The notes under the pieces were generated by a model. It ran no database searches. It was not told the origin of the DNA and was given only the letters and a program-made list of their open reading frames with translations. DNA of 64,000 nt, taken from NCBI RefSeq assembly GCF_004010195.1, contig NC_057726.1, positions 62,246,850 through 62,310,849 of the forward strand, written 5' to 3'. Positions 1 to 46,397 of the stretch are shown here, in pieces. Position numbers and translations under genes: made by a program. This DNA is from Chiloscyllium plagiosum (lineage: Eukaryota). Position 1 is the first letter of the stretch. The number at the start of each line of letters is the position of its first letter.

Positions 1-3000
1 AGACAGACGTTTCTGTGGCCAGCAGAGAAAAGGCAAAATGGTGTGTTGCTTCCCTGGTGCCAGGATCAAGGATGTCTCAGAGAGCGTGCAGAATGTTCTC
101 ACGAGAGAGAGGGGCCAGCAGGAGGTCATTATCCACACTGGAACCAACGACATTGGAAGGGAAAAGGTTGAGACTCTTGAAGGGAGATTACAGAGAGTTA
201 GGCAGAAATTTAAAAAGGAGGACATCAAGGGTAGTAATATTTGGATTACTCCCAGTGCTACAAGCTAGTGAGGGCAGGAATAGGAGGATAGAGCAGATGA
301 ATGCATAGCTGAAGAGCTGGTGCATGGGAGAAGGATTCACATTTTTGGATCATTGGAATCTCTTTTAGGGTAGAAGTGACCTGTACAAGAAGGACGGATT
401 ACATCTAAATTGGAAGGGGACTAACATACTGGCAGGGAAATTTGCTAGAACTGCTTGGGAGGATTTAAACTAGTCAGGTGAGGGGGTGGGACCTAGGGAG
501 ATAGTGAGGAAAGAGATCGATCTGAGACGGGTACAGCTGAGAACAGAAGTAGGTCAAACACTCAGGGCAGGCAGGGACAAGGAAGGACTAATAAATTAAA
601 CTGCATTTGTTTCCATGCTAGGGACCTTACAGGGAAGGCAGATGAACTCAGGGCTTGGTTAGGAACATGGGACTGGGATATCATAGCAATTACGGAAACA
701 TGGCTCAGGGATGGGCAGGACTGGCAACTTAATGTTCTAGGATACAAATGCTACAGGAAGGATAGAAAGGGAGGCAACAGAGGAGGGGGAGTGGCATTTT
801 TGATCAGGGATAGCATTACAGCTGTGCTGAGGGAGGATATTCCCGGAAATACATCCAGGAAAGTTATTTGGGTGGAACTGAGAAATAAGAAAGGGATGAT
901 CACCTGTTTGGGATTGTATTATAGAGCCCCAATACTCAGAGGGAAATTGAGAAACAAACTTGTAAGGAGATCTCAGCTATCTGTAAGAATAATAGGGTAG
1001 TTATGGTAGGGGATTTTAACATTCCAAACATCGATTGGGACTGCCATAGTGTTAAGGGTTTAGATGGAGAGGAATTTCTTAAGTGTGTACAAGACAATTT
1101 CCTGATTCAGTATGTGGATGTACCTACTAGAGAAGGTGCAAAACTTGACCTACTCTCGGGAAATAAGGCAGGGCAGATGACTGAGGTGTCAGTGGCTGAG
1201 CACTTTGGATCCAGCGACCATAATTCTATTAGATTTAAAATAGTTATGGAAAAGGATAGACCAGATCTAAAAGTTGAAGTTCTAAATTGGAGAAAGGCCA
1301 ATTTTGGAGGTATTACACAAGAACTTTCGAAATCTGATTGGAGGCAGATGTTTGAAGGTAAAGGGGTGGCTGGAAAATGGGAAGCCTTCAGAAATGAGAT
1401 AACAAGAATCCAGAGAAAGTATATTCCTGTCAGGCTGAAAGGGAAAGCTGGTCGGTATAGGAAATGCTGGATGACTAAAGAAATTGAGGGTTTGGTTAAG
1501 AAAACGAAGGAAGCATATGTCAGGTATAGACAGGATAGATCGAGTGAATCCTTAGAAGGGTAAAAAGGAAGGAGGAGTATACTTCAGCGGAAAATTAGGA
1601 GTGCAAAACGGGAACATGAGATAGGTTTGGCAAATAGAATTAAGGAGAATCCAAAGTGTTTTTACAAATATATTAAGGACAAAAGGGAAACTAGGAAGAG
1701 AATAGGTCCCCTCAAAGATCAGAAAGGCAGCCTTTGTGTGGAGCCACAGAAAATGGGGGAGATATTAAATGAATATTTTATATCAGTATTTACTGTGGAA
1801 AAGAATATGGAAGATATAGACTGTAGGGAAATAGATGGTGACATCTGTCCAGATTACAGAGGAGGAAGTGCTGGATGTCTTGAAACGGTTAAAAGTGAAT
1901 AAATCCCCAGTACCTGATCAATTGTACCCGAGAACTCTGTGGGAAGTAAGAGAAGTGATTGCTGGGCCTCTTGCTGAGATATTTGTATCATCGGTAGTCG
2001 CAGGTGAGGTACCGGAAGACTGGAGGTTGGCAAATGTGGTGCCACTGTTTAAGAAGGGCGGTAAAGACAAGCCAGGGAACTATAGACCAGTGAGCCTGAC
2101 CTCGGTGGTGGGCAAGTTGTTGGAGGGAATCCTGGGGGACAGGATATACACGTATTTGTAAAGGCAAGGACTGATTAGGGATAGTCAACATGGCTTTGTG
2201 TGTGGGAAATCATGTCTCATAAACTTGATTGAGTTATTTGAAGAAGTAACAAAGAGGATTGCTGAAGGCAGAGCAGTAGATGTGATCTACATGGACTTCA
2301 GTAATGTGTTCGACATGGGAGACTGATAAGCAAGGTTAGATGTCATGGAATATGGGGAGAACTAGCTATTCGGATACAGAACTGGCTCAAAGATAGAAGA
2401 CAGAGGGTGGTGGTGGAGAGTTGTTTTTCAGACTGGAGGCATGTGACTAGTGGAGTGCCACAAGGATCGGTGCTGGATCCTCTACTTTTTGTCATTTATA
2501 TAACTGATTTGGATGCGAGCATAACAGGTACAGTTAGTAAGTTTGCAGATGACACCAAAATTGGAGGTGTAGTGGACAGCGAAGAAGGTTACCTCAGATT
2601 ACAACAGGATCTTGGCCAGATGGGCCAATGGGCTGAGAAGTGGCAGGTGGAGTTTAATTCAGATAAATGCGATGTGCTGCATTTTTGGGAAAGCAAATCC
2701 TAGTAGGACTTATACAATCAATGGTAAGGTCCTAGGAATTGTTGCTGAATGACGAGACCTTGGAGTGCAGGTTCACAGCTCCTTGAAAGTGGAGTCACAA
2801 GTAGATAGGATAGTGAAGAAGGCGTTTGGTATGCTTTCCTTTATTGGTAAAAGTATTGAATACAGGAGTTGGGAGGTCGTGTTGCAGCTGTACAGGACAT
2901 TGGTTTGGCCACTATTGGAATATTGCGTGCAATTCTGTTCTCCTTCCTGTTGGAAAAATGTTGTGAAACTTGAAAGGGTTCAGAAATGATTTACAGATGT

Positions 3001-9416: not shown

Positions 9417-9545
9417 TCATCTTCCAGTCTGCAGCGCTGCATACTCTATGCCTTCTTTGGGATGATGGTACTTCTCCGGTTTCATTGCACTATTCAACTT
9501 TAGAGCAGTATATGTCACCTTATTAGCGACAGCGTCTTGTCCGAC
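9417..9545 (-). CDS. Gene A exon 7, terminal cytoplasmic exon with ITIMs VTYTAL and IEYAAL
   Basis: Acceptor gcctttacag. Reads VGQDAVANKVTYTALKLNSAMKPEKYHHPKEGIEYAALQTGR, TGA at 9419-9417. Confidence 0.85.
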   Translation of the reverse strand, partial: VGQDAVANKVTYTALKLNSAMKPEKYHHPKEGIEYAALQTGR

Positions 9546-12500
9546 CTGTAAAGGCAGCATTTAGAAATATTGTTGGAATAATATGGAACAGGATGTCCTC
9601 AAAGTGGTCATCAGAAGGACATGGAACTGACTTTCTGTATCTCACATGGTCAATGTGAACTGAGGCAAAAGCCTTCACTGACATCCTGAATCTCGATTTC
9701 ATCCTAATAATGTAAATTCTCCCTTGGTTATTCAGTCTTACCTCGGCGTATGTGCTTCTCTCTACTTCAAATATACGTCTTGGAGTCCTCTTGCCTCTGT
9801 TGAATTCTACCGCAGTGTATTGCACACCCTCCGACGGCGCTTCCTGCCAGGGACAGATGCAAAATATTTCATTAAGTCCCTATTTCATGATTTTAACAAT
9901 TCGTTCACCAAGCAGGGAACAAATGTACCCTTGGCACGACATCACTTGCAGAATCCACGTTTCAGATATATTCACGACATTACAAACATTAATGCATTGT
10001 GGGCAATTTTACAAGCTAAACTTTTCTTGACATGCATTTCGTAACACAATGTTTCAATGTCAAAAAGTGTCGGCATTGGAGAGGATTTATTTTCAATCGA
10101 AATAATGACTGAAAGTGTAAAGTGCTATTAGCTAGAAACATTCTCATAAATATGACCAGATTTTAAAAATACAATTAACATTATTTATCAAAAAGGCCAT
10201 TGCACCAACTGCATTTCAAACGTCGTTGAGTGAGCATATACTTCATTAAATAACCTTAAAGCGTTCTGAGGTGATTAGCATATTTCTGCCATCATTGCAT
10301 GCGTCCCGGGCATTGCAAACCCCTGTGGTGATGAAGGAATGAACTCATTACCTTGTCACGACGATCCGGTTGCCTTGTGCATTCTCCTTCATCTGCATAC
10401 CAATGAAATATAATTACACTATGAGATGGAATTATTAACTCAGTTTTCGTGTGGAAAATGAAGCGTTACATTTCTGAATCACAGCGATTGAAAAAGACTG
10501 TCAATGTTCAGTTGCTACACAACAATAATGAAGAAGGGAGAATATGACATGGTCAACATCAGTTTCTAGTCCTCCCGTTCTTTAAGGAAGAATCATTGCT
10601 AGGAAGAAGAATCACATTGCCAGCTTCATTTCTGGCAGGGTACAATTCATTAGTTATGTTCAAAAGTGACGTTTTTCTTTGGAAACTAATACTCCTGAGA
10701 AATATTAACATTCTAATGAATTGCACCCTGCCAGAAATGAAGCTGTTAATGTTCAAAAGTGACGTTTTTCCTTCGAAACTAATATTCCTGAGAATTATTA
10801 ACATACTGATCACAAAATTATAACTATTTCTGCGTTATGAAATGGGTCTGAAACAATCTGAACTCGCTTAGAAAGTAATCATTTGCGTTTTCACCTTTAA
10901 ATCATTTGGCTTTCTCCCGAACATGCTAATTCCCCTTCATCCCCTTTATTGTCCTCAGACTTCAACTGGATCGAAAATCAAGAGTTGACAGTATTTCTTA
11001 CTTCTGTTAGATCGAAGCCCATATCGCTTTACAATTATGGTCACAAGCACGAGAAACGAAAATCCAACTGCCGCACAAATTGGAGTCCAGAAAATGAGTG
11101 AACTGTTGATACTGTCTGCAAAATTAAGAGGACATTAATTGCTGGTGGTGCTTGGATAGGAACTATTAAGAACTGCAAGAACCGCATTATTGAAGGGCAG
11201 TGAAAAAATAGAAGTGCCAAATATTCTTTCAGTTGAATGTCGAAGTCACTTCCATTTCCAATAGATGGCAAATTCGGAATCAGTTTCTGGAATGGATTGT
11301 TGGTTTGTACATCACAAAGGACTGTTTGCAAAGGTCGGGACACAAAACTGGGTGATTATCCTTGGACTAAAATACTGTTCTTCTGGACTTTGTTACGGAT
11401 TAACACACGTTTTCTTGAAATTAGAGTCATGATTTCACAAGCATTTTCATCGCTGGTCACATCAAATTCTGAAATGGGGTGATCGGATTACGAACCTTTT
11501 GCAAGTAAGTGAACTGTCTTTTTGATATTCATTGTATAACAAAAGACATCTACAAGCTTTGTCAATTGTCGTTTTAAGACAGGACAATATATTGTCAAAG
11601 TTAATGCATCAACTTTGCGCACCATAGACAAGTCTCGTCCTCACATAAGCTTTGTGTTAAGCGTGAGCGCGATCCCGATTGAACGTGCCCTGGGTGGTTG
11701 AGAGATAATACAGTACTTGATAAGGGATGTCTTAGAATTCTGCCTGGACACAACCAACGGGGAATGCAGGTTGGGCGAAACCAAACAAAACAAAGACCTC
11801 CCTTTGTATCGGGAAAGTAGGCAGTCGTCAGGAATGAAGCATTTTTACACGTAAGCAAAACTAGTGAATGAGATGAAGGCAGAAATGGATTGAACAGCTC
11901 ACGTCTAAACATTATTACTACGACATAAATAAAGGAATTAGAATGTAAATAAGGTTTTGTTGCTTTCAACACAAATGACAACTTAATAGAAGGAATTAAA
12001 ATATGGCATTTCCCACGAAAACACTGCAGATTAGCTCCATAATATGCATACATTATGTGATGCATTTCGTTACATACTATAACAATAGTTAACTCACCTT
12101 GTTGGTCTCCAGAAAGTGTGAAAATAGTGTGGACGACGACAGCAGGAGTCTTTAGGGAGACGTGAGATACCGAACAGGTATACATGGTATTACTCGAAGG
12201 AGGTCGAGACACAGCCAAAGAACTGGATACTTCATACAACCCCTCGCTGTTCTGCACTTTATTAGTATTTATTCCGACTGTAGTTTCGGAGTCGTTTATA
12301 TACCAGGCGAGAGTGAAATCCTCCGGATAAAATGGAACTGTTTCACACAGAAGGGTCAAAGAAACTGGTGAGTTTTCTTTATTTAACCTGGACGTAATTT
12401 TCAGTGGTACTGGGGAAACTGCATGAAAAGAATTGAAAAAGCCATGTTATTGGAAAACCGGAAAATGTTAAATTTGAGCATGCTTTTCAACCACTCTGTT

Positions 12501-13856
12501 TTATCACAATCTCAGCATTCAAAGACGCAGCTTATTGTCTACATAACTTTATGTGCAAGCTTTCGAACTGTGGCATTTATTCACTTTTACTTGAAGTATC
12601 GGCTCCAATACTTGCTTTTTCTCAGCAATTGAGCCAGGGCAGTGGAAAGGACAAAGAAAGTAATGTTCATCAGCCCTCGTGTTTTGACGCTCACATGAAG
12701 AGTAACGATGAAAATGCTGCTTGTCGTTCAAATGATGATTATTACGTTAGCCAAATTTCAAAACCAAAGTATTGTTACTCAAGAAATATATTAAATCTGT
12801 TGAACCCCAGGAGCTACCGATTATCTGTATTGTTTTAGATACTAATTGGGGGGCACTGAATCTACTGCGTTGTAAGCTTCAAAATGTGACTTCTTTTGAA
12901 TTGCTCCCCTTCATCAGTAAGTAACTTCACTCTGATTTTCAAGCCATGACGCGGAAATTATGTAAGAGCTAGTTTCTGTACGCTTCAACCTCAGAAGGAG
13001 TAATTGGGTGTAGTCAGGACATCAATGTCACACCACAGACTAGCTAGATTGTTGTGCTCGCATTGACATAAGTTGCTTGTTGTCGAGTATTTGCATCGGA
13101 AATTTTGCTGGTAAACACCTGGTATTTAAGGTGCCTTTGGAATTATGATGGTTAATAGTTATAAAAGTTTCAGTTTTCTGCCTGTGATATTGATTGTCCA
13201 ATTACAATACTTTCAAGAGAATCGAATTACTAAGTGTAGGTCACCGCTCAAGTGATCAGTCCCCATGATTAAACTGCAAACGTTCATGAAATAAGCGATC
13301 AGTATCACGCTCTCACTTACCGTGCACAAATAAATGGGAACCAGTTCCATTTATTTGACCTATTCCTTGATAAATCACACCGCAGTGGTAGACTCCAGAC
13401 TCTTGAATGGTAACGCTCAGCAAGTTACAGAAAGCTGATGCTTCATTGTCAGCACCAAATCGTTTTCTGGGAAGCGTCTGAAAATGATCATTTCCAATCT
13501 GCTTCCACCAAATAACCTTTGGTTTTGAACGGGGCCGAGAGCTGGGGAATGTGCAGTGGAATGTAACGTCCTCCCCTCTGTTCACAGTTATTTCTTTGGG
13601 CGTTTGAGTAACACTGGACGAAGTGTGATCCGCAGCTGTTAGAAACAAAGTAAGATACAGATAACTGTCGTATACGGCATCAAGATAGAAGAATTCAATA
13701 CTTCAACAGAGAGATGAATTAATATTCTTTAAATGAACGAGGAGCTGTTTCGAAAGCCTTTAATTAATTAAAGCAGATCTGTCAATTAAATAAGCAAGTA
13801 CCGGTAAGAATGGACTCAAGTAGAATCAAACAAAGAAAATTCATCCTCGCTGTCAT
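9417..13856 (-). CDS. Gene A: non-rearranging IgSF inhibitory receptor, leader-V(J)-C1-TM-cytoplasmic tail with 4 ITIM-like motifs (SIRP-like architecture), 358 aa, 7 coding exons
   Basis: Exons (minus strand) 13856-13802, 13635-13321, 12418-12098, 11115-11002, 10392-10352, 9843-9742, 9545-9417 total 1077 nt with no internal stop. All introns are GT-AG with phases 1,1,1,1,0,0, the typical IgSF pattern. The paralog at 32.2-37.7 kb repeats the same exon layout. Confidence 0.88.
9742..9843 (-). CDS. Gene A exon 6, cytoplasmic, ITIM VQYTAV and the start of STYAE/V
   Basis: Acceptor tgtccctggcag, donor GAG|gtaaga, 102 nt phase 0/0: EAPSEGVQYTAVEFNRGKRTPRRIFEVERSTYAE. Confidence 0.85.
10352..10392 (-). 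CDS. Gene A exon 5, membrane-proximal cytoplasmic exon (NEGECTRQPDRRDK)
   Basis: Acceptor ggtatgcag, donor AAG|gtaatg. The 41-nt exon converts phase 1 to phase 0 exactly as needed to join exons 4 and 6. Confidence 0.75.
10621..10810. repeat. A-B-A'(inverted)-B local rearrangement in gene A intron 4
   Basis: 33-bp inverted repeat 10621-10653 / 10713-10745 (1 mismatch). About 62-bp direct repeat 10656-10717 / 10749-10810. Confidence 0.9.
11002..11115 (-). CDS. Gene A exon 4, stalk plus transmembrane segment (DSINSSLIFWTPICAAVGFSFLVLVTIIVKRYGLRSNR)
   Basis: Acceptor taattttgcag, donor A|gtaaga, 114 nt phase 1/1. About 23 uncharged hydrophobic residues followed by a KR stop-transfer. Confidence 0.88.
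12098..12418 (-). CDS. Gene A exon 3, Ig C1-set domain
   Basis: Acceptor ttttcatgcag, donor G|gtgagt. C1 signatures LTLLC..FYPEDFTLAW, GLYEVSSSL and YTCSVSHVSL (CxVxH). Confidence 0.93.
13321..13635 (-). CDS. Gene A exon 2, Ig V-type domain with germline J-like G strand
   Basis: Acceptor tttctaacag, donor G|gtaagt. Motifs VTQTP, GEDVTFHC, VIWWKQ, KRF, ESGVYHC and GTGSHLFV (GxG-x-x-L-x-V). Confidence 0.93.
13802..13856 (-). CDS. Gene A exon 1, signal peptide MTARMNFLCLILLESILT
   Basis: ATG at 13856, short hydrophobic core, phase-1 donor G|gtactt. Homologous to the gene B leader MVFQCLILRDIICT. Confidence 0.8.
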
Positions 13857-13920
13857 TCTAAGCAATGGATTCAACTGACGACTCTGTACAGTTCGTGCGA
13901 GTTGGTAACTGCTGAGATTC

Positions 13921-13963
13921 GTTTCCGGTTTGTTTTCTGCGAGGTATGTCGCAATGACGTTTA
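13921..13963 (-). promoter_or_regulatory. Gene A proximal promoter module: ETS-like CCGGAA plus CRE/ATF half-site TGACG
   Basis: TTCCGG at 13923-13928 and ATGACGTTT at 13954-13962. The same two motifs occur at almost the same spacing upstream of gene B. Confidence 0.55.
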
Positions 13964-16789: not shown

Positions 16790-18212
16790 GGGTGGACAAA
16801 GTTAAGAATCACACAACTACAAGTTACAGTCCAGCAGGTTTATTTGGAAGCAGTAACTTTCGAAGTGCTGCTTCTTCATCAGGGTGGTTGTGAAGCAGGA
16901 CCAGAAGACACAGAATTGATAGCAAAAGATGACTTTGATGCAATGATACATTGAGCAAACCTAGATTGCTAAGTCGTTCATCTTTTAGAATGGATTTTGC
17001 TGGTTACGGTTCTTTAATATATAAATCCCAGAAGTTCATTTAAAGCACGTTTTCAAAATAATTTAAGGTTTTTATAACAAAAGCTGACATCTCAACTCAG
17101 ACAATGCCTTGCAGTTGCGAAGTTAGAGTCTGACTGTATCCCAAACTTGAGTCAGACTGGTTCCATTCCAAAGCGGAATTTACAAATATTATATGAATAC
17201 ATTGCCTGCATTGACTGCTTGCAGTTACTGCATTTTTAAGCAAAATAGAACACATTTGGAAGTTGAATTCTGCAAATACAAAGTCACCCCATTAACGTAT
17301 ATGTGTGTGGCGTGGAGTAGAGAGAGAGAGAGATCGCGTGATAGCAAAGGAGCAGAGCAGAAGCTGATAGCCAAGTACGGTACCCATGAGAATGGCCTCG
17401 ATCAGGTCATTGGGTTCATGTCACACTACATGGGACCCCACTCCAACATCGTATACACACACACAAGCACACACACACACACTTACATACTCAGATACTC
17501 ACACAGACCCTCTCTCAGACACAAGTTCTCTCTCATACGCACACACATACTCCTCCGACACTCACACCCACGCAGACACCCTCTCACAGGCTTATACCCC
17601 ATCACACTCACATCCGCACTTTACCAGGTTTCCACACACGCAAACACATATTCTCTCACGTGCACGCACACTCACATACCCACACTCACTCCATCTCCCT
17701 CTTCTGCACGCGCACACACATATATGCTTATGGGGTGAATTTGTATTTGAAGAATTATATTTGTGGATGCATTCTATTTCGCTCAAAAAATGCAGAAACT
17801 GCAAGCAGTCAATGCATATAAAACTTGTGAATTCCACTTTGGAAATAGAACCAGTCTGACTCGAGAATGGGATACAGACAGACTCTCACTTCACAACTTT
17901 AAGGCTTTGTCTGAGTTGAGATGTCATCTTTGTTATAAAACCTTGAATGATCTTGAGAATGTGACTTAGAAGAAGTTCTGAGATTTACATATTAAAGAAC
18001 GGAACCAGCAAATCCATTCTAAAAGATGAAATACTTAACAATCTCGCTTTGTTGAATGTATAATTGTACCACTGTAATCTTTTGCTGTAAACTCTGTGTC
18101 TGCTGGTCCTGCTTCACAATCACCTATGAAAAAGCAGTGCATCGAAGGTTAGCGCTTTCCAAATAAATCTGTTGGACGATAACCTGGTGTTGTGTGATTT
18201 TTAACTTTGTCT
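16790..18212. mobile_element. Penelope-like element remnant with inverted terminal segments and a CA-rich spacer
   Basis: 16790-17290 is the inverse of 17735-18212. EQKLIAKYGTHENGL is a GIY-YIG C-terminus. Hammerhead core at 16854-16882. CA/CT low complexity 17450-17725. Confidence 0.75.
16854..16882 (-). ncRNA. Minimal hammerhead ribozyme core, second Penelope family
   Basis: CUGAUGA-A-GAAG-CAGCA-CUUC-GAAA-GUUA. Confidence 0.55.
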
Positions 18213-26929: not shown

Positions 26930-29487
26930 GAGACTTGCAAATCACCTGCCAGGGGGATATAATTTCAGAAGTTTAGGTGAACACAGGTTCAGGGGGAGCT
27001 CTTCAGTGGTCAAGGACATTCAACCTCGGATCTTCAGGTTGAACATCCTCCTAGGCAGACTTCGGGACACGTGAGGATGCAGAGTTGCTGAATAGAGGCT
27101 GATAATCATGTTCGGTATCCATGAGGGCAGCCTCAATCCGGACATTAAGTTCATGTCACACTACAGATGACCCAACCACACTATACATATACTGATATGC
27201 ATGGCACATGTACACACACACTCTCACACAAGCACACACATACGGGCGCTCTCTCATACACACAATACATTCACACTCGTGCTCTCTCATACGCACACAC
27301 GCCCTCACACTCACTCACACTCTCTCTCAAGCACACACAAGCTCACATGCATGCTCTCACAAACATATACTTCCACGCAGTTACACACACTTCCTCTCTC
27401 AAGCAACACATTCTCTCAAGAGCATGTGCACACACACAAACACAGCCACACTCACTCCATCAAACACACCCTCTCATAGATAAGTTCTCTCTCTCTCTCT
27501 CTCTTTCTCTGTCTCTCTCTCTGTCTCCCACACACACACATGCACACACAGATATAGATCTATGGGGTGAATTTGCATTTGCAGACTTGTATTTGCAGAT
27601 GCATTCTATTTTGTTCAAAAACCACACAATGAAGGAGTCAAGACTGTTGATGAGGGCAGAGCGGTAGACCTCATCTATATGGATTTCAGTAAGGCCTTTG
27701 ATAAGATTCCAAATGGTAGGCTGCTCTGGAAGGTTAGCTCACATGGAATCCAGTGGGAGGTGGCAAATGAGATACTCAATTGACTTGATGATAGGAAGCA
27801 CAGGGTAATAGTGGAAGGATGTTTGTTGGACTGGAGGCCTGTAACTAGTGGTGTGCCTCAGGTGTCAGTGCTGGGCCCATTGCTTTTGTTGATTATATTA
27901 ATGATTGGGATGAGAATTTACAAGGCATGATTAATAAGTTTGTAGATGACATTAAAATAAGTGTTATTATGGGCAGGGAGGAAGGAAGGTTATCAGAAAA
28001 TGCAGCAGGATATTGATCAGCTGGGGAAGTGGGCCAAGAAATGGCAAATGAAGTTTAACATAGATAAGTGTGAGGCATTGCATTTTGGAAAGTCAAATCA
28101 AGGTAGGAGTTTCATGGTGAATCGTGGAGCCTTAAGGAGTGTAGTGGAACAGGGGGACTTTGGAGCTCAGGTTCACAGTTCTCTGAAAGTGAAGTCACAG
28201 GGAGACAGGGTAATGAAGAAAGATTTTGGCACATCTGGCCTTCATCAGTCAGATCATTGAATATTGAAGTTGGGAAGTTATGTTGCAGTTGTATAGGACA
28301 TTGGTGAAACTGCGCTTGGAATATTGTGTTCATAATTGGTCACCTTGCTATAGGAAGGATGTTATTAAACTGGAAATAGTGCAGAAGAAATTTATGAGGA
28401 CGTTTCCAGGGCTCAACTGTCTGAGTTATAGGGAGAGATTAGACAAGGTAGGACATTTTTCTCTCGAGCATAGGAGACTGAGCGGCAATCTTTTGAAGTG
28501 TATCAGATTGTGTGAGGCATGGGTAGGGTGAAGGCACACAGTCTTTTTTTCCAGGGTTGGACAATCGAGAACTAGAGGACATCAGTTTAAGTTTAGAGGA
28601 GATAGAATAAAAGGGAACCTGAGGGGCAACATTTTTACACAGAGGGTAGTAAGCATATGGAATGAGCTGCCAGTGGAAGTTGTTGAGGTGGATACAATAA
28701 CAACATTTAAAAGGCAGTTGGATGAACACGTGGATAGGAAAGATGTTAAAGGATCCACTGTACTCTGGGTTAGTGAATTCCACTGATTCATGATCTTTAG
28801 AGAGAAGTAAAAAGGGACATTTAAGCAACTCTTGGATAGGTACATGGAAGATAGTACAATGAAGGGCATATATTAAAGTAGGATAAAAGGCCGGCACAAC
28901 ATTGTGGGCCAAACAGCCTGGACTGTGCTGTACTGTTCTATGTTAAATAAGGATAGGGGTCAAGTGCAGGGAACTGGAGTTAGTGTAGATGGACATTTTT
29001 TGTGGCATGGGCTAGTTTGGACCAAAGGGCCTGTCTCCATGTTGTAGGACTCTATGACTATCGATAGACAGTCAGTCAGTGTGGCATTTTATAAATTCCC
29101 ACTTTGGAAATAAAACCAATCTGGCTCCAAGTTGAAATACAAACAGACTTTAAACATTGCCTCACATCTAAAATGTATTGCCTGACTTGAGGTATGACCT
29201 TTTTTCTGATAAAGCCTGAAGTTATCTTGGGGTAGTGACTTCAAAGAAATTCTGGGATTTCCATATTAATCAATCGAAAACTGCACCTCCATTCTAAACG
29301 ATTAAAGACTGCATAGCCATCTCGGTTTGTTCACATAAACTGTGTGACCCTTTGACCTTTTACTTCTAAATTCTGTTTCCGATGTATTCTCTCTTCCTAG
29401 CTGCCTGAGGAAGGAGATGGGGCTCTGAAAGCGTGTGGTTTCAAAAAAAACCTGTTGGACTATAACCCAGTGTCATGTGACTTTTTG
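26930..29487 (+). mobile_element. Penelope-like remnant (same family as 16790-18212) split by a CR1 insertion
   Basis: 26930-27629 and 29065-29487 join to match 17340-18212. CA/CT-rich spacer 27200-27550. Confidence 0.7.
27630..29060 (+). mobile_element. 5'-truncated CR1 LINE (RT to 3' tail) containing a short second CR1 3' end at ~28745-28945
   Basis: YMDFSKAFDK, GVPQ, LYRTLVKLRLEYCV motifs; tail gactctatgact. Confidence 0.88.
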
Positions 29488-32249: not shown

Positions 32250-35200
32250 GTTCCCGATACGTATTGTTTCTATGTAGACCGTGCGTTTCTTTCTACAAAT
32301 GGGCGTATTCTGAAATTCATTCTTCATTTTTCTACATCCACGTTTTCTCTGTGCATATCATCTCATCAAAGGCTAGTACTCGTTCAGTCTGCAAATCCAA
32401 TGTTTGACAATATCACTAATTTATTATTTTAGGCGGTATTTCAAAATAATTACCAGAAAAGCTACCAAACGCCGATTTTCTAAACAGTGTTAAAATTCAG
32501 AAAAACGCATTTCCTTCGTTGTTACATGATTGTTAATGGTACATTGGTGATATAAGTCAGTAAGGCCTACCTTGGCGCATATATATTATTCTTTTCACAT
32601 TTGTGTCGTAATGACTTCTTGCCTCTGCTCAAATCCAACGCAGCACAATGCACGATTTCAGTTACTTCTCCCTGCATGTGTCAGAATCCAAATATTTGGT
32701 TTCCAGCAAATTGCGACTAATAAACAACAGTTGATCAGGGTTCAAGATGAGGTGCACAAACCATATATGTTTGCACAATTGGTCTTACTGGAGCATTGTG
32801 AGCCCTGCAGTTAATACATAATTCTGTCAATGCTCATGCCGCAGCATTGACATGAGCAGCAGATTTACAATATTAAGAATTTTTCTTTCCTCACAACTGT
32901 AGCATGGATGTATCTACAATCAGTTGTCACCTACACATATCTTTCAGGAACCTGGCAATATTCCTTGAGTGATTAAAGGATCATCAGTTATCAGGTGCAT
33001 TCCTCATCATGGTTTTAAAGAGTCACTGACAGCTGGCCAATACTTAGAGAATAGACTTGAACTGTTGGAATGATTTTGTTATACTATTTCCGTTAAAGCA
33101 TGTTTTTCCTTTACCATTTCAACATCTACCTAAAGGAATGAATGAACATATTAGCTCTTCTGTGTATTTTGGCCCATTTATACATTTGTTTATCTGCAAC
33201 AAACAAAATGTAAAAATATTTTAAATGTTTATTTAGTCACCATATTCATGATTGCAAATATACATCAAATGTAAAGGTAATGCGAAGAATAGTTTACGAG
33301 TTTGGATTGAACCAAGGTATTTGAAATGCCGCACCTTATACAAACGAGCAGTAACGTTTCTTTACATTTTTCTTGAAATATCACGGAATATTTTTGGAGA
33401 TTAAGGGAAACCATCTCATTCTTTAAACTTCTTTACTGCATAGATTTCTGGCATTGGAATCCTGCCTGATCTTTATATGACTCAAGAGAAAGATTCGCCT
33501 AGTTCTCTCTTACTTGTGTGAAATGGCTTTGCGCACAGCAAACATAGCAAAGTAAGTGGTTAGAACTGGATTGTATAACAGATCCCGAAGACAGCTCGAC
33601 CACTCAATACAAACCTGTCTAATTTTCCGCCTCAGCTGCACATTCTTCCATGCAGTACATACTCCTTAATTCTTGAGAGACTAAAATCTATCTATTTTAC
33701 CATTCAACATACAACTCGCTGGGGCAGGTAAGTTCAAAGGTGCTCAAGTTTCTGCTTAACGTAGTTGTAGGTGATCGACTGACACTTTGCTGAGACACTA
33801 CCTTTCTATTCAAAATTCCCCCGGCCACCATAAACAATTTCCTAGTGCGTACCCCATCGTGCCTAGTCAGCGCATCGCCAATTTCTCAAAGGCAAATAGA
33901 AATAAAGAATAAATATTGAGCTTTTTCGCAAAGACCAGGACAAGAGAATGAATCAAATGTCTTTTGATACAGGGATAGGGGGAGCTGGTATAGAAACTCA
34001 GCCATATTGGTTTTGTAAACTGCATCAGGTTGAGATGTTGTATTACAGTCCACTTCGGCTAGAGACTCGCCCCCGCTCACTCCTGATCGAACCACAACAG
34101 AATGAGTTAGTAAGTGATTGTTCAGGAGTGAGCATTTCATTTAACATCTTTGAACAGGGACATTTATATCCAAGCAATTATACATATCATTATGACCTTG
34201 TTTAACATTTTGCAATCATACCACCTTCATAAACTGCATTTCAAAATAATCGACATTCGCTCATAACAAATAACAATGTTAGTCGAGCTCTCCTGATGAA
34301 CTTTTGTTTTTTGCCCGAAACGTCGATTCTCCTGCTCCGCGGATGCTGCCTGACCTGCTGTGCTTTTCCAATACCACACTCTCGACTCTCCCTCCCCGTC
34401 GAGTTAGGAAGTTGTCAGTAACACCGAGGTTTGCATTTAAATAGTTAGCGTATAGTAGATCTTATCATTGTTATATCCCACTGGTACCACGTTCCGGCAA
34501 AGATCCCGAACGCCAGGAACATCACTCCAGTAGCCACACACCCAATACCTGCAAAGTGAAATGGTATTCCGACACGAGCTACAAGGTTGAAACAATGATT
34601 ACATTATGGCGAATGTTAACGGAAAAGGCCTTAACATTGATTAGCAAAGCTGGTGCTTTCAGTATATCTGTTCAAATTGCATTAAGACCAGACAGAAAAA
34701 CACAGGTAATATTTGAAGTAACGCCTTCATAAAATAAACTAGACATTCGGAATTAATCTATGAAAGAGCTTGTTGGTTAAGCAATCTCATAATATTAGCA
34801 GAGTGAATTCAATGAGAGAGGGACAGATTCTATGTAATCAGATGACTTAATCAGTTTCTTCGCTTTTTATAAATCAATGTGTTTAAGTGCTTTTCCGGTA
34901 ATGAGAAGTATTATTTCTTGCAGCATCACTTCACTGATTGCGTGTTCTATACTGGCAGATGTTCGAGTGCAAGCGTCGGGATAGTAACTCTTTAAAACTG
35001 CCCCAGTGTAAAGATAGCAGTCAATGGGAACGAAAACAAATCAGAAAAGTATGAACTATAAGCAGATGCGGAAATATATTTAAGTAGAATATAAGGCGTT
35101 TATTAACACGCTTGCCTTCATTGCTCGCAATTTTGAGCATGAGAATTGTGAGGTCATGTTGAGGTTGTATAGACGTTGGCGAGGCCTCTTCTGGAGTACT

Positions 35201-37733
35201 GTGTCCAGTTCTGGTCGCCCTGTTGGAGGGAGGATATCATCAAACTGGAGAGGGTTCCGAAAAGATTTACGAGGATGTTGCCAGGAATGGAAGGTTTGAG
35301 TTACAGGAAGAGGCTGGATAGACTGGGACGTTTTTCAAAGGAATATAGGAGGTTGAGGGATGATGTAACAGAGGTTCTTTTTAATCATGAGAGGTAAACA
35401 TACGGGAAATGGCAGGTGTTCTTTTCCTGTGGTGGGAGACTTCAAGACTAAGGGGTATTTTCTAAGGTGTGAGGCGAAAAAATTAAAAAGAATGTAGGGC
35501 AACACTTTTACACAGAGAAGATTTCATGTGTGAAATGAGCTTCAAGAGGAAGTGGTGAACTGTGGTCGAGTTACAACGATTAAAAGACATGAATCAGAAA
35601 TGTTTGGAGCGATATGAGCCAAGAGCAGGCGGGCGCGGCTATTATAATTTGGGATTATGGCTTGTATAGGCTGGCTGGAATCTGTTTACGTGCTGTATGA
35701 CTTTTATTGTTATTGACTCGGTGTATAAAAGGAAAGAATGTTTGCGGAGAATGACTAATAGTTGGTGATTTAAAGTATTGACAATAAATTGCCTTCAATT
35801 TTAATGTTTGCCTTGATGTATTAGAAAGGATTTCCGTGAACACTCTTCCTGAATAGTAAGAGCCACGAGGTTTACGGTGGAAATCTGTATAAATTGTACA
35901 GGAAGATGGCTCTCCTTTTTGCACTGTTAGCTTCCTACTTCAGGGATCGTATGTGAAGCAGTACCTGAAGTCTGCAGTGAGCTAGGAAAGGTGAACAGAT
36001 ATATCTGGTGTTACTTGGGATAAGTTGCATCTCAACCAAAGAGTTGGAAACTCCATTCAGCCCATCGGGGTTCTTCGCATTAGTTATACGTATCACTATT
36101 GCGTTCTCAATGTCATTTTTATATCAGGTGATCGTGAGTTCCGACGGATGAAATGAAGCTGTTTCACACGCGAGTATCAGAGACAACAGTGGAATTCATT
36201 TCAAGTGGCCTGCAGGCAATCCACAGTGAGCTTGGGGTCGCTGAGGGGTAGAAAACAAACAAAGTTGTTACCGGATTTTGATGTGGGAAATTGAATATAA
36301 TTCAGATTAATATTCAGTAGTTTTATGATTAGAACAGCATTCGAAAGGGACACTTCTGTCATTTTAATGTTTCTCACATCATCTGCACCTATGAATTCAA
36401 TGTAAACGCCAGCATGCGATGAATTTCATGACAGCAGCATTTTCCTAGCTGCTATCAATTCGGAACAGGGACCACTGGAGTCGATAATTTAATTGTTTTC
36501 TCTATACCGACACTGCCAGACTTTCTGAGTTTCTCCAGCAACTTCTGCTTTTGCTTCAGATTTCCAGCATGCAAAATTCTTTGTTTTAAATTTTGATAGC
36601 ATCAAAATGGGCCAACAGTCGTCTATGTACTGGGAGAAGCACATTATTCTGGGTGATTTTCAATTACCATATGTTTGCAATTTGTCCAGAATTTTCTCAA
36701 TCGGGCACATATTATATAACGTACATAATGTACATAATAAGTATGTTATGTTTGCAGTTCTAATCAATCTGATTAAACTTCATTTGTTTTCGAGTTTTGA
36801 GAAGATTTGTAGCTCAGATTGAGTTTCTGGATGTAGGTTTGCTCGCTGAGCTGTAAGGTTCGTTTTCATTTGTTTGTAGTGCTCTTGAGTCCGGCTTTAT
36901 TTGTCTGCCGCTACACCACGGAAGATGAAAGTACGATTTATCTGAAAATGTGCTGATAGTCATGCTTTTACTGACAAAAAAAAACGCAACACAATAATCA
37001 CAAAAGCAAAAAATAGTACTGCGGTTGCTGGAAATCTGAAACTAGCTTGGATATGGCTGGAGAAATTCAACAGGTCTGGCGGCATCTGTGGAAATAAACA
37101 GATATGACTCTTCGTCAGTACTCAACTCTGCTTCTCTCTCCACAAGCGACCTGATCCACCATTTAAATCACAAAACACCACTAATTGCCTTTGATGTATT
37201 TACAACTGTTCGTCTTCCTGGTGATTGTCACCTACCATCCCCGCATCCTTGATGTGATCCGATCCTTGTTGAATACTGTACAGTAATGAAGTCCAAAATC
37301 TTGGATAGTCACTTGCAGCAAGCATAGGAGAGCACTCCCTTCACGGCTAACACCAAATTGCTTTCTGCTATTGCCGGGGATTAGGAATTAATTCTCGCCC
37401 TGTTTCCACCAATGCTCATTTAGCGAGGAATCCTCCCCAGAGGTGGGAAAGAAGCAGATCAAGGCGATATTCTTCCTTCTGGATATAAATACTTCTTTAG
37501 GTTTTTGAATAACACCGAAAACAGCGTGTTCCTCAGTTGCCAGAAAATAGGGTCATAGATAATTTAATAGTACTGGGCAAAGCATGCAGATCGAAGAGGG
37601 AGAAAAGATCTTATTTTGCGGAATTATATTTCGGTAAATAAATATACGATAAATTGATTTAGGTAGGGTGATGATCAAAGAGGTATTTACCTGTACAAAT
37701 AATATCCCTGAGAATCAAGCATTGGAAAACCAT
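32250..37733 (-). pseudogene. Gene B: pseudogene paralog of gene A (leader-V-C1-TM-3 cytoplasmic exons)
   Basis: Leader 37733-37691. V exon 37536-37236 (acceptor CAG>CAA, TAA at 37390-37388, G strand frameshifted). C1 exon 36240-~35922 (frameshifts, conserved Trp>TGA at 36126-36124). TM exon 34578-34466 (donor GT>AT). Probable exon 33193-33155 (donor GT>CT). Exon 32671-32571 (GEVTEIVHCAALDLSRGKK). Terminal exon from 32388 with stops. V domain about 40% identical to gene A by hand alignment. Confidence 0.88.
35090..35705 (+). mobile_element. CR1 LINE 3' fragment in gene B intron 3
   Basis: RPLLEYCVQFWSPCWREDIIKLERVPKRFTRMLPG. Confidence 0.85.
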
Positions 37734-42899: not shown

Positions 42900-44143
42900 T
42901 CTAACTTAATAGAGTTCTTCGAGGAAGTGACCAAGTTGTTAGATGAAGGAAGGGCTGTTGATGTCATATACATAGACTTCAGTAAGGCATTTGATAAGTT
43001 TCCCCATTGTAGACTAATGGAGAAAGTGAAGTCACATGGTGTGCAGGGTGTTCTGGCTAGGTGGATAAAGATCTGGTTGAGCAACAGGAGACAGAGAGTA
43101 GTAGTTGAAGGGAGTTTCTCGAAATGGAGAAAGGTGACCAGCGGTGTTCCACGGGGGTCAGTATTGGGGCCACTGTTATTTTTAATATACATAAATGATC
43201 TAGAAGAGGGCACTGTTGGTATGATCAGCAAGTTTGCAGATGACACAAAGATTGGTGGAGTGGCAGAAAGCATAAGGGACTGTCAGAGAATACAGGAAGA
43301 TATAGATAGACTGGAGAGTTGGGCGGAAAAGTGGCAGATGGCTTTCAATCAAGAGCCTTTTGTGAGGCAAGTCTAATTCTTGAGCGAATTATACAATGAA
43401 TGGAAGAGCCTTGGGAAAAGCTGATGGGCAGAGAGATCTGGAAGTGCAGGTACATTGTACCCTGAAGATGGCTGCACAGGTGGATAGAGTGGTCAAGAAG
43501 GCATATAGTATGCTTGCCTTCATTGGACGGGGTATTGAGTATAAGAGCTGGCAAGTCATGTTAAAATTGTACAAGACATTGATTCAGCCACATTTAGAAT
43601 ACTGTGTACTGTTCTGGTCGCCACATTACCAAAAGGATGTGGACACTTTGGAGAGGGTGCAGAGAAGGTTTACGAGGATATTGCCCTGGTATGGATGGTA
43701 CTAGCTATGAAGAGACGTTGAGTAGGTTAGGTTTATTTTCACTAGAAAAAAGGAGATTGAGGGGGGACCTGATTGAGGTTCATAAAATCATGAAGGGCAT
43801 AGACAGGGTGGATGGAGACAAGCTTTTTCCCAGGGTGAAGGATTCAATAATGAGAGGTCATGCTTTCAAGGTGAGAGGTGGAAGGTTTAAGGGGGATACA
43901 CGCGGCAAGTACTTCACACAGAGGGTGGTGGGCGTTTGGAACGTGTTGCCAGCAGAGGTGGTAGAGGCAGGCACGGTAGATTCATTTAAGATGCGTCTGG
44001 ACAGATGCACGAGTATGTGGGGAGCAGAGGGATACAAATGCTTAGGAATTGACTGTCAGGTTTAGATAGAGCATTTGGATTGGCTCAGGCTTGGAGGGCC
44101 GAAGGGCCAGTTCCTGAGCTGTACATTTTCTTTGTTCTTTGTT
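42900..44143 (+). mobile_element. Nested 5'-truncated CR1 LINE
   Basis: YIDFSKAFDK, KFADDTKIG, own 3' tail ttctttgttctttgtt. Host sequence resumes at catccagg. Confidence 0.88.
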
Positions 44144-45276: not shown

Positions 45277-46397
45277 TATTCTAAAATGCATTAAGGTGGA
45301 CAAGTCTCCAGGTCCAGATGGGATCTATCTCAGGTTCTTGAGGGAAGTGAAATGGAAATAGCTGGGCCTTAACAGATATCTTTGCAGCATCCTTGAACAT
45401 GGGTGAGGTCTTGGACGACTGGAGAATTGCTAATGTTGTCCCCTTGTGTAAGAAGCATAACAGGGATAATCCAGATAATTATAGACCGGTGAGCCTGACA
45501 TTAGTGATAGGAAAGCTGCTGGAGAAGATACTAAGGGATAGGATCTATTCCTATTTGGAAGAAAATGGGCTTATCAGTGATAGGAAACATGGTTTTGTGT
45601 TTGGAACATCATGTCTTACTTACTTTATAGAATTCTTTGAGGAAATAACAAAGTTGAATGATGAAGGAAGGGCTGTAGATATTATGTACATGGACTTCAG
45701 TAAGGCATTTGATAAGGTTTCCCACGGTAGGCTGATGGAGAAAGTGAAATCACATATGATTCAGGGTGTACTAGCTAGATGGACGAAGAACTGGATGGGA
45801 AACAGTAGAAAGAGAGTAGTAGTGGAGGGGAGTTTCTCAAAATGGAGAACTGTGACCAGTGGTGTTCCATAGTGATTCATGCTGGGACCACTGTTGTTTG
45901 TGATGTACACAAAATGATCTGGAGGAAGATACAGGTGTTCTGGTTAGCAAGTTTGCAGATGACAATTAGATTGGTGGAGTAGCAGATAGTTAAAAGCATT
46001 GTCTGAGAATGCAGCAGAATATATAGATTGGAGAGTTGGGTGGAAAAATGGCAGTTGGAGTTCAATCCGGGCAAATGCGAGGTGATGCATTTTTGAAGAT
46101 CCAATTCAAAAGCAAACTATACAGGAAGTGGAAAAGTGCTGGGAAAAATTGATGTACAGAGAGATCTATTTGTTCAGGTCCTCTGTATCCTGAAGGTGGC
46201 AATGCAGTTCAATAGAGTGGTCAAGAAAGCATACAGTATGCTTTCCTTCATTGGACGGGGTATTGAGTACAACAGTTGGCAGATCATATTACAGTTGTAT
46301 AAGACTTTGGTTTGGCCACATTTGGAATACTGCGTACAGTTCTGGTCCAAAAGGATATAAATGCTTTGGAGAGGATGCACAGGAGGTTCACTATGAC

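What the first reader, a model, noticed from the sequence alone, without database searches (positions are those of the whole stretch)
9417..13856. Intact non-rearranging V(J)-C1 antigen-receptor-like gene with a four-ITIM tail in a shark-type genome
Seen: a clean 7-exon, 358-aa model in which a single exon encodes V plus a J-like G strand (GTGSHLFV, no RSS), followed by one true C1-set domain (FYP..W, CxVxH), an uncharged TM and four ITIM-like motifs (VQYTAV, STYAEV, VTYTAL, IEYAAL). Established: C1-set domains occur almost only in Ig, TCR, MHC/beta2m, tapasin, SIRP and a few relatives, and a germline-joined VJ-C1 receptor is the predicted form of the pre-RAG antigen-receptor ancestor. SIRPalpha is V-C1-C1 with four tail tyrosines. 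Inference: this is an inhibitory member of a cartilaginous-fish VJ-C1 receptor family shaped like one TCR/Ig light chain wired to SHP-1/2 signalling, a candidate NK/myeloid self-recognition receptor. The ORF track shows only fragments of it.
Basis: partly seen in the sequence, partly recalled or inferred. Interest (0 to 1): 0.88.

Follow-up and report, generated by a model that had tools for sequence, protein, structure and literature searches.

The report
Shark SIRP-like inhibitory receptor gene
An intact shark gene encodes a surface receptor built like one antibody light chain or T-cell-receptor chain, fixed in the germline and ending in inhibitory signalling motifs; it is one member of a large receptor family of sharks, rays and chimaeras that databases hold only under automatic names.

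Summary
On the minus strand, 13856-9417, there is a clean 7-exon model: six GT-AG introns, phases 1,1,1,1,0,0, 1077 nt, 358 codons plus stop. It encodes a split leader, a V-set domain with a J-like strand in the same exon, and one C1-set domain. Both domains score above Pfam's cut-offs. There is no RSS. An uncharged transmembrane segment and four ITIM-type tyrosines follow, in two pairs 23 residues apart.

All seven exon translations align in order with a 363-aa zebra shark protein. One run's contig shows intron 4 spliced out exactly as modelled.

The gene is not unique. It belongs to a family found here in 16 cartilaginous-fish species, with inhibitory-type and basic-transmembrane, short-tailed (activating-type) members. 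A decayed paralog lies in this window. This scan's first-stage notes flag many similar loci elsewhere in this genome.

Public records name these proteins automatically and inconsistently, as SIRP-alpha-like, tapasin-related-like, MHC class II beta-like and others. My paper searches found no description of the family.

Its closest named relative is SIRP, but it scores no closer to SIRP than to Ig light chains, and it has one C1 domain, not two. Its function is most likely inhibitory signalling through SHP-1/2; this is inferred. Ligand, cell type and synteny are untested.

The parts
13802..13856 (-). Exon 1: start codon (13856-13854) and the first part of a split leader; ends in phase 1
   Evidence: 71% identical over 17 residues to the leader of zebra shark P0152. 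The same leader, joined to V in the same way, is in Chiloscyllium punctatum P0001.
13321..13635 (-). Exon 2: end of the leader plus a V-set domain whose J-like G strand (GxGxxLxV type) is in the same exon
   Evidence: Translation. Pfam V-set 5.2e-11. No RSS. 79% identical to P0001 and 58% to P0152.
12098..12418 (-). Exon 3: a single C1-set domain
   Evidence: Translation. Pfam C1-set 1.5e-11. 72% identical to P0152. In run X2 the depth over this exon is 42, against about 13 in the next intron; a contig of X1 ends exactly at 12098.
11002..11115 (-). Exon 4: short stalk, uncharged transmembrane segment and a basic stop-transfer
   Evidence: Translation. 43% identical to P0152 over 35 residues. 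A joint in an X1 contig ends exactly at 11002.
10352..10392 (-). Exon 5: 41-nt cytoplasmic exon
   Evidence: Translation. 10 of 11 residues are identical to P0152. The X1 contig joint 10392->11002 skips 609 nt, with ends CT..AC on the + strand, which is GT..AG on the minus strand.
9742..9843 (-). Exon 6: cytoplasmic. Holds ITIM-type motif 1 and most of motif 2; the two tyrosines are 23 residues apart
   Evidence: Translation. Motif 1 is conserved in P0152 and motif 2 is not.
9417..9545 (-). Exon 7: the last residue of motif 2, ITIM-type motifs 3 and 4 (tyrosines 23 residues apart) and the stop codon 9419-9417
   Evidence: Translation. 75% identical to P0152 over 40 residues, up to the C-terminus.
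35950..37546 (-). Decayed paralog of the same family: V remnant 37546-37265 and C1 remnant 36189-35950
   Evidence: tblastn. In-frame stops in V and at the conserved Trp codon of C1, and no J-like motif.

Best explanation
This is an intact gene for a type I membrane receptor. From the outside in, it has a germline-joined V(J) domain, one C1-set domain, an uncharged transmembrane helix, and a tail of about 90 residues with four ITIM-type tyrosines arranged as two pairs.

It is the inhibitory-type member of one lineage of a large multigene family. The family is so far seen only in cartilaginous fish. It also has members with a basic residue in the membrane segment and a short tail, which makes it a paired inhibitory/activating family of the SIRP kind.

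Likely mechanism (inferred, not shown):
1. A ligand binds the V domain.
2. Src-family kinases phosphorylate the tail tyrosines.
3. Each pair of tyrosines, 23 residues apart, docks the tandem SH2 domains of SHP-1 or SHP-2.
4. The phosphatase damps activating signals in the leukocyte that carries the receptor.

The family evolves by tandem duplication and decay.
For: Shown:
- Gene model, splice sites and phases.
- V-set and C1-set above Pfam cut-offs.
- No RSS.
- Motif enrichment: 18 of 200,000 shuffles reach three motifs.
- All 7 exon peptides align in order with Stegostoma P0152.
- One contig of run X1 joins 11002 to 10392 exactly as modelled intron 4.

Family:
- 47 of the 150 best representatives found with the V exon have V followed by a C1 that matches this C1 exon.
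- All 20 representative clusters looked up (19 of them V-C1, one the V-only fragment P0001), and all 14 hits, are chondrichthyan: 16 species in all.
- Of the 33 representatives with a predicted TM, 14 have a neutral TM plus ITIM/ITSM-type motifs and 7 have a basic TM plus a short tail without a motif.
- In the trees, win_V groups with P0001 (SH-aLRT 95) and then with the Stegostoma trio (99). win_C1 groups with the Stegostoma trio (100).
- A decayed paralog lies in the window.

Established knowledge: SIRP-alpha ITIMs recruit SHP-1/2, and SIRP-beta uses a basic TM residue to bind DAP12 (passages of PMC12975943).
Against: - No phosphorylation, SHP binding, ligand or cell type was tested.
- Transcript evidence is thin. 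It is one spliced joint (30 letters on the shorter side) in a run whose kind is not on record. Two single-cell RNA runs of the species gave 0 reads at 2% and 6% sampling, which is no test.
- The second ITIM is absent in the zebra shark relative.
- Both neighbouring copies known so far are pseudogenes (note s1-885851, unchecked).
- 28 of the 47 V-C1 representatives were not looked up by name, so restriction to cartilaginous fish rests on a sample.
Confidence: 0.72

Rival explanations
1. The family is simply the cartilaginous-fish SIRP family. On this reading it and tetrapod SIRPs descend from one VJ-C1 paired-receptor gene, and this gene is a SIRP-alpha co-ortholog that has one C1 domain instead of two.
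For: - The nearest named clusters by protein-language-model features are SIRP-alpha, for both P0020 and P0152 (0.97 and 0.96-0.97).
- With the family profile A1, SIRP-alpha d1-d2 scores 67.3 bits. SIRP-alpha d3 alone scores 45.3 bits, the best C1-only stretch printed. For comparison: UrIg2 C3 35.9, IgG CH3 27.7, CH1 27.0.
- Both families have paired inhibitory and basic-TM forms (PMC12975943 passages).
- The most frequent automatic name is SIRP-alpha-like.
Against: - There is one C1 exon only, and no second C1 remnant in the introns.
- The only V-C1-C1 relative seen (skate P0044) has two C1 copies identical at 98 of 101 residues, so it is a recent duplication.
- Ig kappa and lambda chains score the same as SIRP over V-C1 (66.5 and 66.3 bits).
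- With a V-only profile, SIRP is not among the best 60 PDB sequences, while VNAR, lambda V, TCR beta, CD79b and TCR alpha are.
- Automatic names scatter over at least seven families.
- No tree with SIRP references and no synteny could be made.
Confidence: 0.3
2. The copy is intact by sequence but silent or dying: a recent duplicate in a birth-and-death cluster that no longer serves as a receptor.
For: - The paralog 22 kb away in this window is dead.
- A first-stage note reports another pseudogene 22.6 kb before the window (s1-885851, unchecked).
- 0 reads were found in two single-cell RNA runs.
- Motif 2 is not conserved.
Against: - The frame is open over all 358 codons, and 6 of 6 introns are canonical.
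- The cytoplasmic exons are conserved with a species of another genus; exon 7 is 75% identical.
- Runs X1 and X2 show a spliced joint and raised exon-3 depth.
- The single-cell runs were sampled at only 2-6% and count as no test.
Confidence: 0.08
3. It works as a two-chain, antigen-receptor-like molecule. On this reading the C1 domain, and perhaps the V domain, pairs with a second chain of the family, so the binding site is formed by two V domains as in Ig and TCR.
For: - C1-set domains usually occur in pairs in Ig, TCR and MHC (established knowledge).
- The best single-V matches of the V profile are antigen-receptor V domains.
- UrIg2 forms dimers (PMC12227049 abstract).
Against: - There is no cysteine in the short stalk between C1 and the membrane.
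- 33 of 47 family representatives carry an N-x-S/T sequon that starts one residue before the J-like GxG. In Ig and TCR this is where the V-V interface lies; that point is inference from established structures.
- No structure prediction was possible.
Confidence: 0.12

Closest known systems
SIRP family (SIRP-alpha, -beta, -gamma)
   Same: - V domain with a J-like strand followed by a C1-set domain, in a type I membrane protein.
- An inhibitory form with several ITIM tyrosines, and sister forms with a basic TM residue and a short tail (PMC12975943 passages).
- SIRP-alpha clusters are the nearest named clusters by features.
- SIRP-alpha d3 is the best C1-only match printed.
   Different: - One C1 domain, not two.
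- The V domain is not specially SIRP-like.
- The family is no closer to SIRP than to Ig light chains over V-C1.
- It is much more expanded: 47 representative clusters at 50% identity.
- CD47 binding and synteny are untested.
UrIg and UrIg2 (non-rearranging shark VJ-C1 genes)
   Same: - Single-exon VJ, split leader and C1-type constant domain, found in cartilaginous fish (PMC12227049 sections 4 and 7).
- The PDB entry 9dmx matches the C1 exon at E 4.1e-15.
   Different: - UrIg has three C domains and is secreted. Nurse shark UrIg2 has nine C domains plus a TM. The passages I searched hold no 'ITIM'.
- The family profile scores UrIg2 V-C1 at 48.6 bits, against 66-67 bits for IgL and SIRP.
- The paper describes UrIg and UrIg2 as individual genes (one MHC-linked, one in the antigen-receptor complex), whereas this is a large family.
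Ig light chains and TCR chains
   Same: - V(J)-C1 layout with a split leader and phase-1 exon boundaries.
- The best single-V matches are VNAR, lambda V, TCR beta V and TCR alpha V.
- Kappa and lambda chains score 66.5 and 66.3 bits over V-C1.
   Different: - V and J are one exon, with no RSS.
- The tail signals by itself through ITIM-type motifs.
- There is no stalk cysteine for an interchain bond.
PRARP (non-rearranging VJ genes of non-mammalian bony vertebrates; Fu et al. 2019)
   Same: A non-rearranging VJ IgSF membrane protein discussed as a remnant of the antigen-receptor precursor (mention in PMC10751288 passages). Anything further about its architecture would be recalled only, so I do not rely on it.
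   Different: Could not be compared. The paper is not held and no PRARP sequence was available to me.
CD33-type Siglec / CEACAM1-type ITIM plus ITSM tails
   Same: A membrane-proximal (V/L)xYxxL motif followed about 20 residues later by a (T/I)EYxx(L/V/I) motif near the C-terminus. That this is the Siglec and CEACAM1 pattern is recalled. CD33 clusters score 0.94 by features.
   Different: The ectodomain is unrelated in detail: no sialic-acid-binding V-set and no C2-set domains.

Membership tests
C1-set immunoglobulin domain | Match to Pfam PF07654 above its gathering score, with the conserved Cys...Trp...Cys core and the YxCxVxH strand F motif | tested here: met
   44.9 bits against a cut-off of 21, E 1.5e-11. 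The motifs are visible. C, W, C and H are invariant in the 24 aligned relatives.
Germline-joined VJ domain | V-set domain whose G strand carries the J-like GxGxxLxV motif within the same exon | tested here: met
   V-set 43.1 bits against a cut-off of 26. The motif lies at the end of exon 2. 43 of 47 family representatives have it.
Rearranging antigen receptors (Ig, TCR) | Separate V and J segments flanked by recombination signal sequences | tested here: not met
   V and J are contiguous in one exon. No heptamer (at most 1 mismatch) + 12/23 (+/-1) spacer + nonamer (at most 2 mismatches) on either strand of 13000-13950.
SIRP | Ectodomain of one V-set and two C1-set domains | tested here: not met
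   The definition is from PMC12975943 passages. Here there is one C1 exon, and tblastn finds no second C1 in the gene.
SIRP | Inhibitory form with cytoplasmic ITIMs; sister forms with a basic TM residue and a short tail | tested here: met
   Four ITIM-type motifs here. In the family, 14 representatives have a neutral TM with motifs and 7 have a basic TM with a short tail, out of 33 with a predicted TM. This is at motif level only.
SIRP | Closer in sequence to SIRP than to other VJ-C1 families | tested here: inconclusive
   SIRP-alpha d1-d2 scores 67.3 bits, against kappa 66.5 and lambda 66.3; d3 scores 45.3, the best C1-only stretch printed. SIRP is absent from the best 60 of the V-only profile. 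SIRP-alpha is first by features. No tree with references could be made.
SIRP | Conserved synteny with the SIRP locus; CD47 binding | not testable with these tools
The window holds no conserved neighbour gene, only retroelement fragments.
UrIg / UrIg2 | VJ exon with a split leader followed by three or more C1-type domains | tested here: not met
   The split leader and VJ are met, but there is only one C domain. The definition is from PMC12227049 sections 4 and 7.
ITIM-bearing inhibitory receptors | (S/I/V/L)xYxx(I/V/L) in the cytoplasmic tail of a membrane receptor; phosphotyrosine recruits SHP-1/2 | tested here: inconclusive
   The motif part is met four times (shuffle control). Phosphorylation and SHP binding cannot be tested with these tools.
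Unnamed chondrichthyan V-C1-TM family | Collinear similarity over all exons to annotated members, and placement inside the family tree | tested here: met
   7 of 7 exon peptides align in order with P0152. Tree placement has SH-aLRT 95-100.
PRARP | Sequence kinship with chicken PRARP-A and PRARP-B | not tested
   No sequence or paper was available.

The most novel reading that the evidence does not exclude
The family may be a third surviving lineage of non-rearranging VJ-C1 genes, beside UrIg and UrIg2, and the only one that keeps the single-chain, membrane-bound V(J)-C1 plan of an Ig light chain or TCR chain. Its V domain is nearest to antigen-receptor V domains. Its C1 domain is nearest to SIRP and IgL. 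It is already organised as paired inhibitory and activating receptors. If it branches at or below the split of SIRPs and rearranging receptors, it would be a living model of the receptor the RAG transposon invaded, and would suggest that the ancestor was an innate paired receptor.
Probability: 0.15. Interest if true: 0.9.

Novelty: new variant of a known kind. Interest (0 to 1): 0.55.

Why it matters
Genes that combine a joined VJ domain with a C1 domain are few, and they are central to the debate on how antibodies and T-cell receptors arose.

This family would put a SIRP-like, paired inhibitory/activating VJ-C1 receptor system at the base of jawed vertebrates. It would do so in a simpler one-C1 form and in many copies.

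It offers testable material: trees, synteny, ligands, and SHP and adaptor binding. These bear on two questions. One is what the pre-RAG receptor looked like. The other is innate self or pathogen recognition in sharks.

The single gene in this window adds one intact inhibitory member. The value lies in the family.

Tried and rejected
Led nowhere:
- The Atlas would not take the C1 exon.
- The search for homologous proteins with P0152 gave 6 hits, and with profile A1 gave 14 hits. All were cartilaginous-fish relatives. I therefore obtained no SIRP, IgL, TCR, tapasin or MHC reference sequences and made no cross-family tree. I left the third search unused.
- Two single-cell RNA runs gave 0 reads.
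- The V-only PDB profile was topped by multi-domain I-set proteins through summed scores.
- Tandem Repeats Finder found nothing in the gene.
- The bacterial promoter scan has no bearing on a shark gene.
- The search for 'PRARP' was swamped by unrelated acronyms.
- Paper searches found no description of this family. The library lacks most subscription journals.
- I did not ask for the supplements of PMC12227049 (table S1, figs S1-S2). They are closed and may list related gene models.

Considered and rejected:
- Rearranging Ig or TCR gene: one VJ exon and no RSS.
- UrIg or UrIg2 ortholog: one C domain and a lower score.
- MHC class II beta, tapasin-related protein or B7-H6 (automatic names of relatives): the N-terminal domain is a V-set with J, not a peptide-binding or tapasin domain.
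- Pseudogene: the frame is open, the splice sites are canonical, and a spliced contig exists.

Full report
**What is there.** The window has no N. Reading the minus strand between 13856 and 9417 and translating each exon by reference gives seven exons:
- 13856-13802: leader
- 13635-13321: V(J)
- 12418-12098: C1
- 11115-11002: stalk and TM
- 10392-10352: cytoplasmic
- 9843-9742: cytoplasmic
- 9545-9417: cytoplasmic, with the stop

All six introns begin GT and end AG behind pyrimidine-rich tracts. The phases are 1,1,1,1,0,0. I did not build, search or fold the joined protein.

**Domains.**
- Exon 2 matches Pfam V-set (E 5.2e-11, 43.1 bits, cut-off 26).
- Exon 3 matches C1-set (E 1.5e-11, 44.9 bits, cut-off 21). 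The next family for exon 3, C2-set_3, stays below its own cut-off.
- The V exon ends in a J-like GxGxxLxV strand inside the same exon.
- A scan of 13000-13950 on both strands found no RSS-like heptamer-spacer-nonamer.
- The TM segment is uncharged.
- The tail has four (S/I/V/L)xYxx(I/V/L) motifs. Two are in exon 6 (the second ends with the first residue of exon 7) and two are in exon 7. The tyrosines of each pair are 23 residues apart.
- Three or more within-exon motifs arose in 18 of 200,000 shuffles of the two exon peptides.

**Independent support for the model.**
- A search of 1.84 billion representatives with the V exon gave 212 hits at E up to 1e-3 and 45 at E up to 1e-10.
- The best hit is a Chiloscyllium punctatum fragment, 79% identical. 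It has the same leader joined to V at the same place.
- A 363-aa Stegostoma tigrinum protein (P0152) aligns with all seven exon peptides in order:

| Exon | Identity to P0152 |
|---|---|
| Leader | 71% |
| V | 58% |
| C1 | 72% |
| TM | 43% |
| Exon 5 | 10 of 11 residues |
| Exon 6 | 41% |
| Exon 7 | 75% |

- Motifs 1, 3 and 4 are kept in P0152 (motif 4 as TxYxxL). Motif 2 is not.
- Reads: two single-cell RNA runs of the species gave 0 reads at 2% and 6% sampling, which is no test.
- Runs X1 and X2, whose kind is not on record, cover the whole stretch, introns included.
- One X1 contig joins 10392 to 11002, skipping 609 nt with ends CT..AC on the + strand. This is exactly modelled intron 4. It has 30 letters on the shorter side and depth 10.6.
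- Another X1 contig ends exactly at 12098, the 3' end of exon 3.
- In X2 the depth over exon 3 is 42, against about 13 in the next intron.
- This is thin but positive evidence of splicing. Two other joints in that table (9901->12644 and 11322->12773) fit no exon boundary.

**The family.**
- 47 of the 150 best representatives have a V followed by a C1 that matches this gene's C1 exon.
- I looked up names for 20 clusters. 19 are V-C1, and one is the V-only fragment P0001. I saw 14 named hits. All are chondrichthyan.
- They come from 16 species: Chiloscyllium punctatum and C. plagiosum, Stegostoma, Hemiscyllium, Rhincodon, Cetorhinus, Mustelus, Scyliorhinus, Heterodontus, Heptranchias, Hypanus, Hemitrygon, Mobula hypostoma, Amblyraja, Pristis and Callorhinchus.
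- The names are automatic and scatter widely: SIRP-alpha-like (PTPNS1-like), SIRP-beta-1-like, SIRP-gamma-like, tapasin-related-like, H-2/HLA class II beta-like, NCR3LG1-like, Ig lambda-1-like, TCR beta-like, or uncharacterized.
- Of the 47, 33 have a predicted TM:

| TM and tail type | Representatives |
|---|---|
| Neutral TM, tail with ITIM/ITSM-type motifs | 14 |
| Basic residue in the TM core, short tail, no motif | 7 |
| Basic TM with a motif | 2 |
| Neutral TM, long tail, no motif | 5 |
| Neutral TM, short tail | 4 |
| Acidic TM | 1 |

- The other 14 have no predicted TM and may be truncated models.
- The family is therefore a paired inhibitory/activating family.
- Quick IQ-TREE trees place the window's V with the C. 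punctatum fragment (SH-aLRT 95) and then with three Stegostoma proteins (99). The C1 groups with the same three (100).
- In the V tree this group sits inside a clade with Heterodontus, Heptranchias, Mustelus, Scyliorhinus and a ray (SH-aLRT 89). Both trees have few columns and midpoint roots.
- A second copy in the window (V 37546-37265, C1 36189-35950) has stops in both domains and no J motif.
- First-stage notes of this scan, which I did not check, report a further pseudogene 22.6 kb before the window. They also report clusters of like genes on the same piece at about -154, -532 and -734 kb and at +6.6 to +7.9 Mb, and on other pieces.

**Relation to known families.**
- With the 24-member family profile A1, the V-C1 stretch and the C1-only stretches score as follows:

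| PDB match | Bits |
|---|---|
| SIRP-alpha d1-d2 | 67.3 |
| Ig kappa chain (V-C) | 66.5 |
| Ig lambda chain (V-C) | 66.3 |
| UrIg2 V-C1 | 48.6 |
| SIRP-alpha d3 (C1 only) | 45.3 |
| UrIg2 C3 (C1 only) | 35.9 |
| IgG CH3 (C1 only) | 27.7 |
| IgG CH1 (C1 only) | 27.0 |

- With the V-only profile A2, the best single-V chains are a shark VNAR (51.5), lambda V (50.3), TCR beta (47.8), CD79b (47.7) and TCR alpha (46.5). SIRP is not among the best 60.
- By protein-language-model features, the nearest named clusters for both P0020 and P0152 are SIRP-alpha (0.96-0.97). Ig kappa-like and CD33 follow at 0.94. These are leads, not tests.
- The one V-C1-C1 relative seen (skate P0044) has two C1 copies identical at 98 of 101 residues. 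The ground plan of the family is therefore V-C1.
- I read this as a SIRP-like family that is about equally far from SIRP and from Ig light chains: V leans to antigen-receptor V domains, and C1 leans to SIRP and IgL.
- It fails the SIRP definition of V plus two C1-set domains (PMC12975943 passages).
- It fails the UrIg and UrIg2 plans of three and nine C domains (PMC12227049 sections 4 and 7).
- PRARP could not be compared. The paper is not held. I saw it only as a citation and mention in PMC10751288 passages.

**Mechanism.**
- Shown: a type I membrane protein with V(J)-C1 outside and four ITIM-type tyrosines inside.
- Inferred from established ITIM biology (for SIRP-alpha: passages of PMC12975943): ligand binding leads to tyrosine phosphorylation. 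Each 23-residue-spaced pair can hold the tandem SH2 domains of SHP-1 or SHP-2. Activating signals are then damped.
- The basic-TM, short-tailed relatives would signal the opposite way through an ITAM adaptor.
- Against a two-chain, Ig/TCR-like assembly: the stalk has no cysteine. Also, 33 of 47 representatives carry an N-x-S/T sequon starting one residue before the J-like GxG, which is where V domains of Ig and TCR meet. That last point is inference.

**Novelty.**
- Paper searches found UrIg, UrIg2, NKp30, PRARP and SIRP discussed as VJ genes. They found no account of this family.
- The library misses most subscription journals, and supplements were closed.
- The proteins themselves are in public records, and this scan has seen the kind repeatedly in this genome.
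- I rate it a new variant of a known kind, of moderate to good interest as a family. The single gene is one member among many.

**Limits.** There is no cross-family tree, because no reference sequences were obtainable. Transcript evidence comes from one run of unknown kind.

Noticed in passing
window 35950-37546 (-): A decayed paralog of the receptor. The V has an in-frame stop and no J-like motif. The C1 has a stop at the conserved Trp codon. It is about 38-39% identical to the intact gene's domains.
   Followed up: partly
window about 34470-34545 and about 32560-32650 (-): Read by eye: a hydrophobic TM-like exon behind an AG, and a stretch resembling the family's tail motifs with the tyrosine replaced. 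These may be the TM and tail remnants of the dead paralog. No tool result supports this.
   Followed up: no
window 10656-10717 and 10749-10810 (intron 4): A 62-nt direct repeat, 90% identical, with 93-nt spacing. Contigs of runs X1 and X2 skip 98 nt here (10676->10775, with 2 letters between). This is either an indel difference or a collapsed repeat.
   Followed up: partly
window 9316 (+): One X1 contig ends here and runs on into 18 A. This suggests a polyadenylated + strand RNA end about 100 nt beyond the receptor's stop codon on the other strand, or an artefact. The first ATTAAA after the receptor's stop lies 711 nt downstream, at 8705.
   Followed up: no
window 1003-1563, 42927-43376, 45393-45872 (+); 51746-52189, 52371-52820, 53470-53868 (-): Fragments of LINE-type endonuclease and reverse transcriptase fill much of the rest of the window. 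The ORFs listed and scanned showed no conserved neighbour gene.
   Followed up: partly
window 17193-17859 and 27167-27667 (+): Long ORFs that translate as runs of T and H. They look like CA-rich simple repeats. This was seen only in the ORF list.
   Followed up: no
protein P0068 (Polypterus senegalus) and its cluster mate P0187: A bony-fish protein with two tandem VJ-like domains is among the V exon's weaker hits. A cluster mate is annotated as fused to PRRC2A, a gene that I recall as lying in the MHC class III region. This points to an MHC-linked, possibly NKp30-like, VJ gene.
   Followed up: no
protein P0044 (Amblyraja radiata): The only V-C1-C1 relative seen. Its two C1 domains are identical at 98 of 101 residues. 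This is a recent exon duplication, or a gene model that joins two genes.
   Followed up: yes
family-wide, end of the V domain (window 13322-13350 region of exon 2): 33 of 47 family representatives, and this gene, carry an N-x-S/T glycosylation sequon that starts one residue before the J-like GxG. This is an odd place if the V domains paired as in Ig and TCR.
   Followed up: partly
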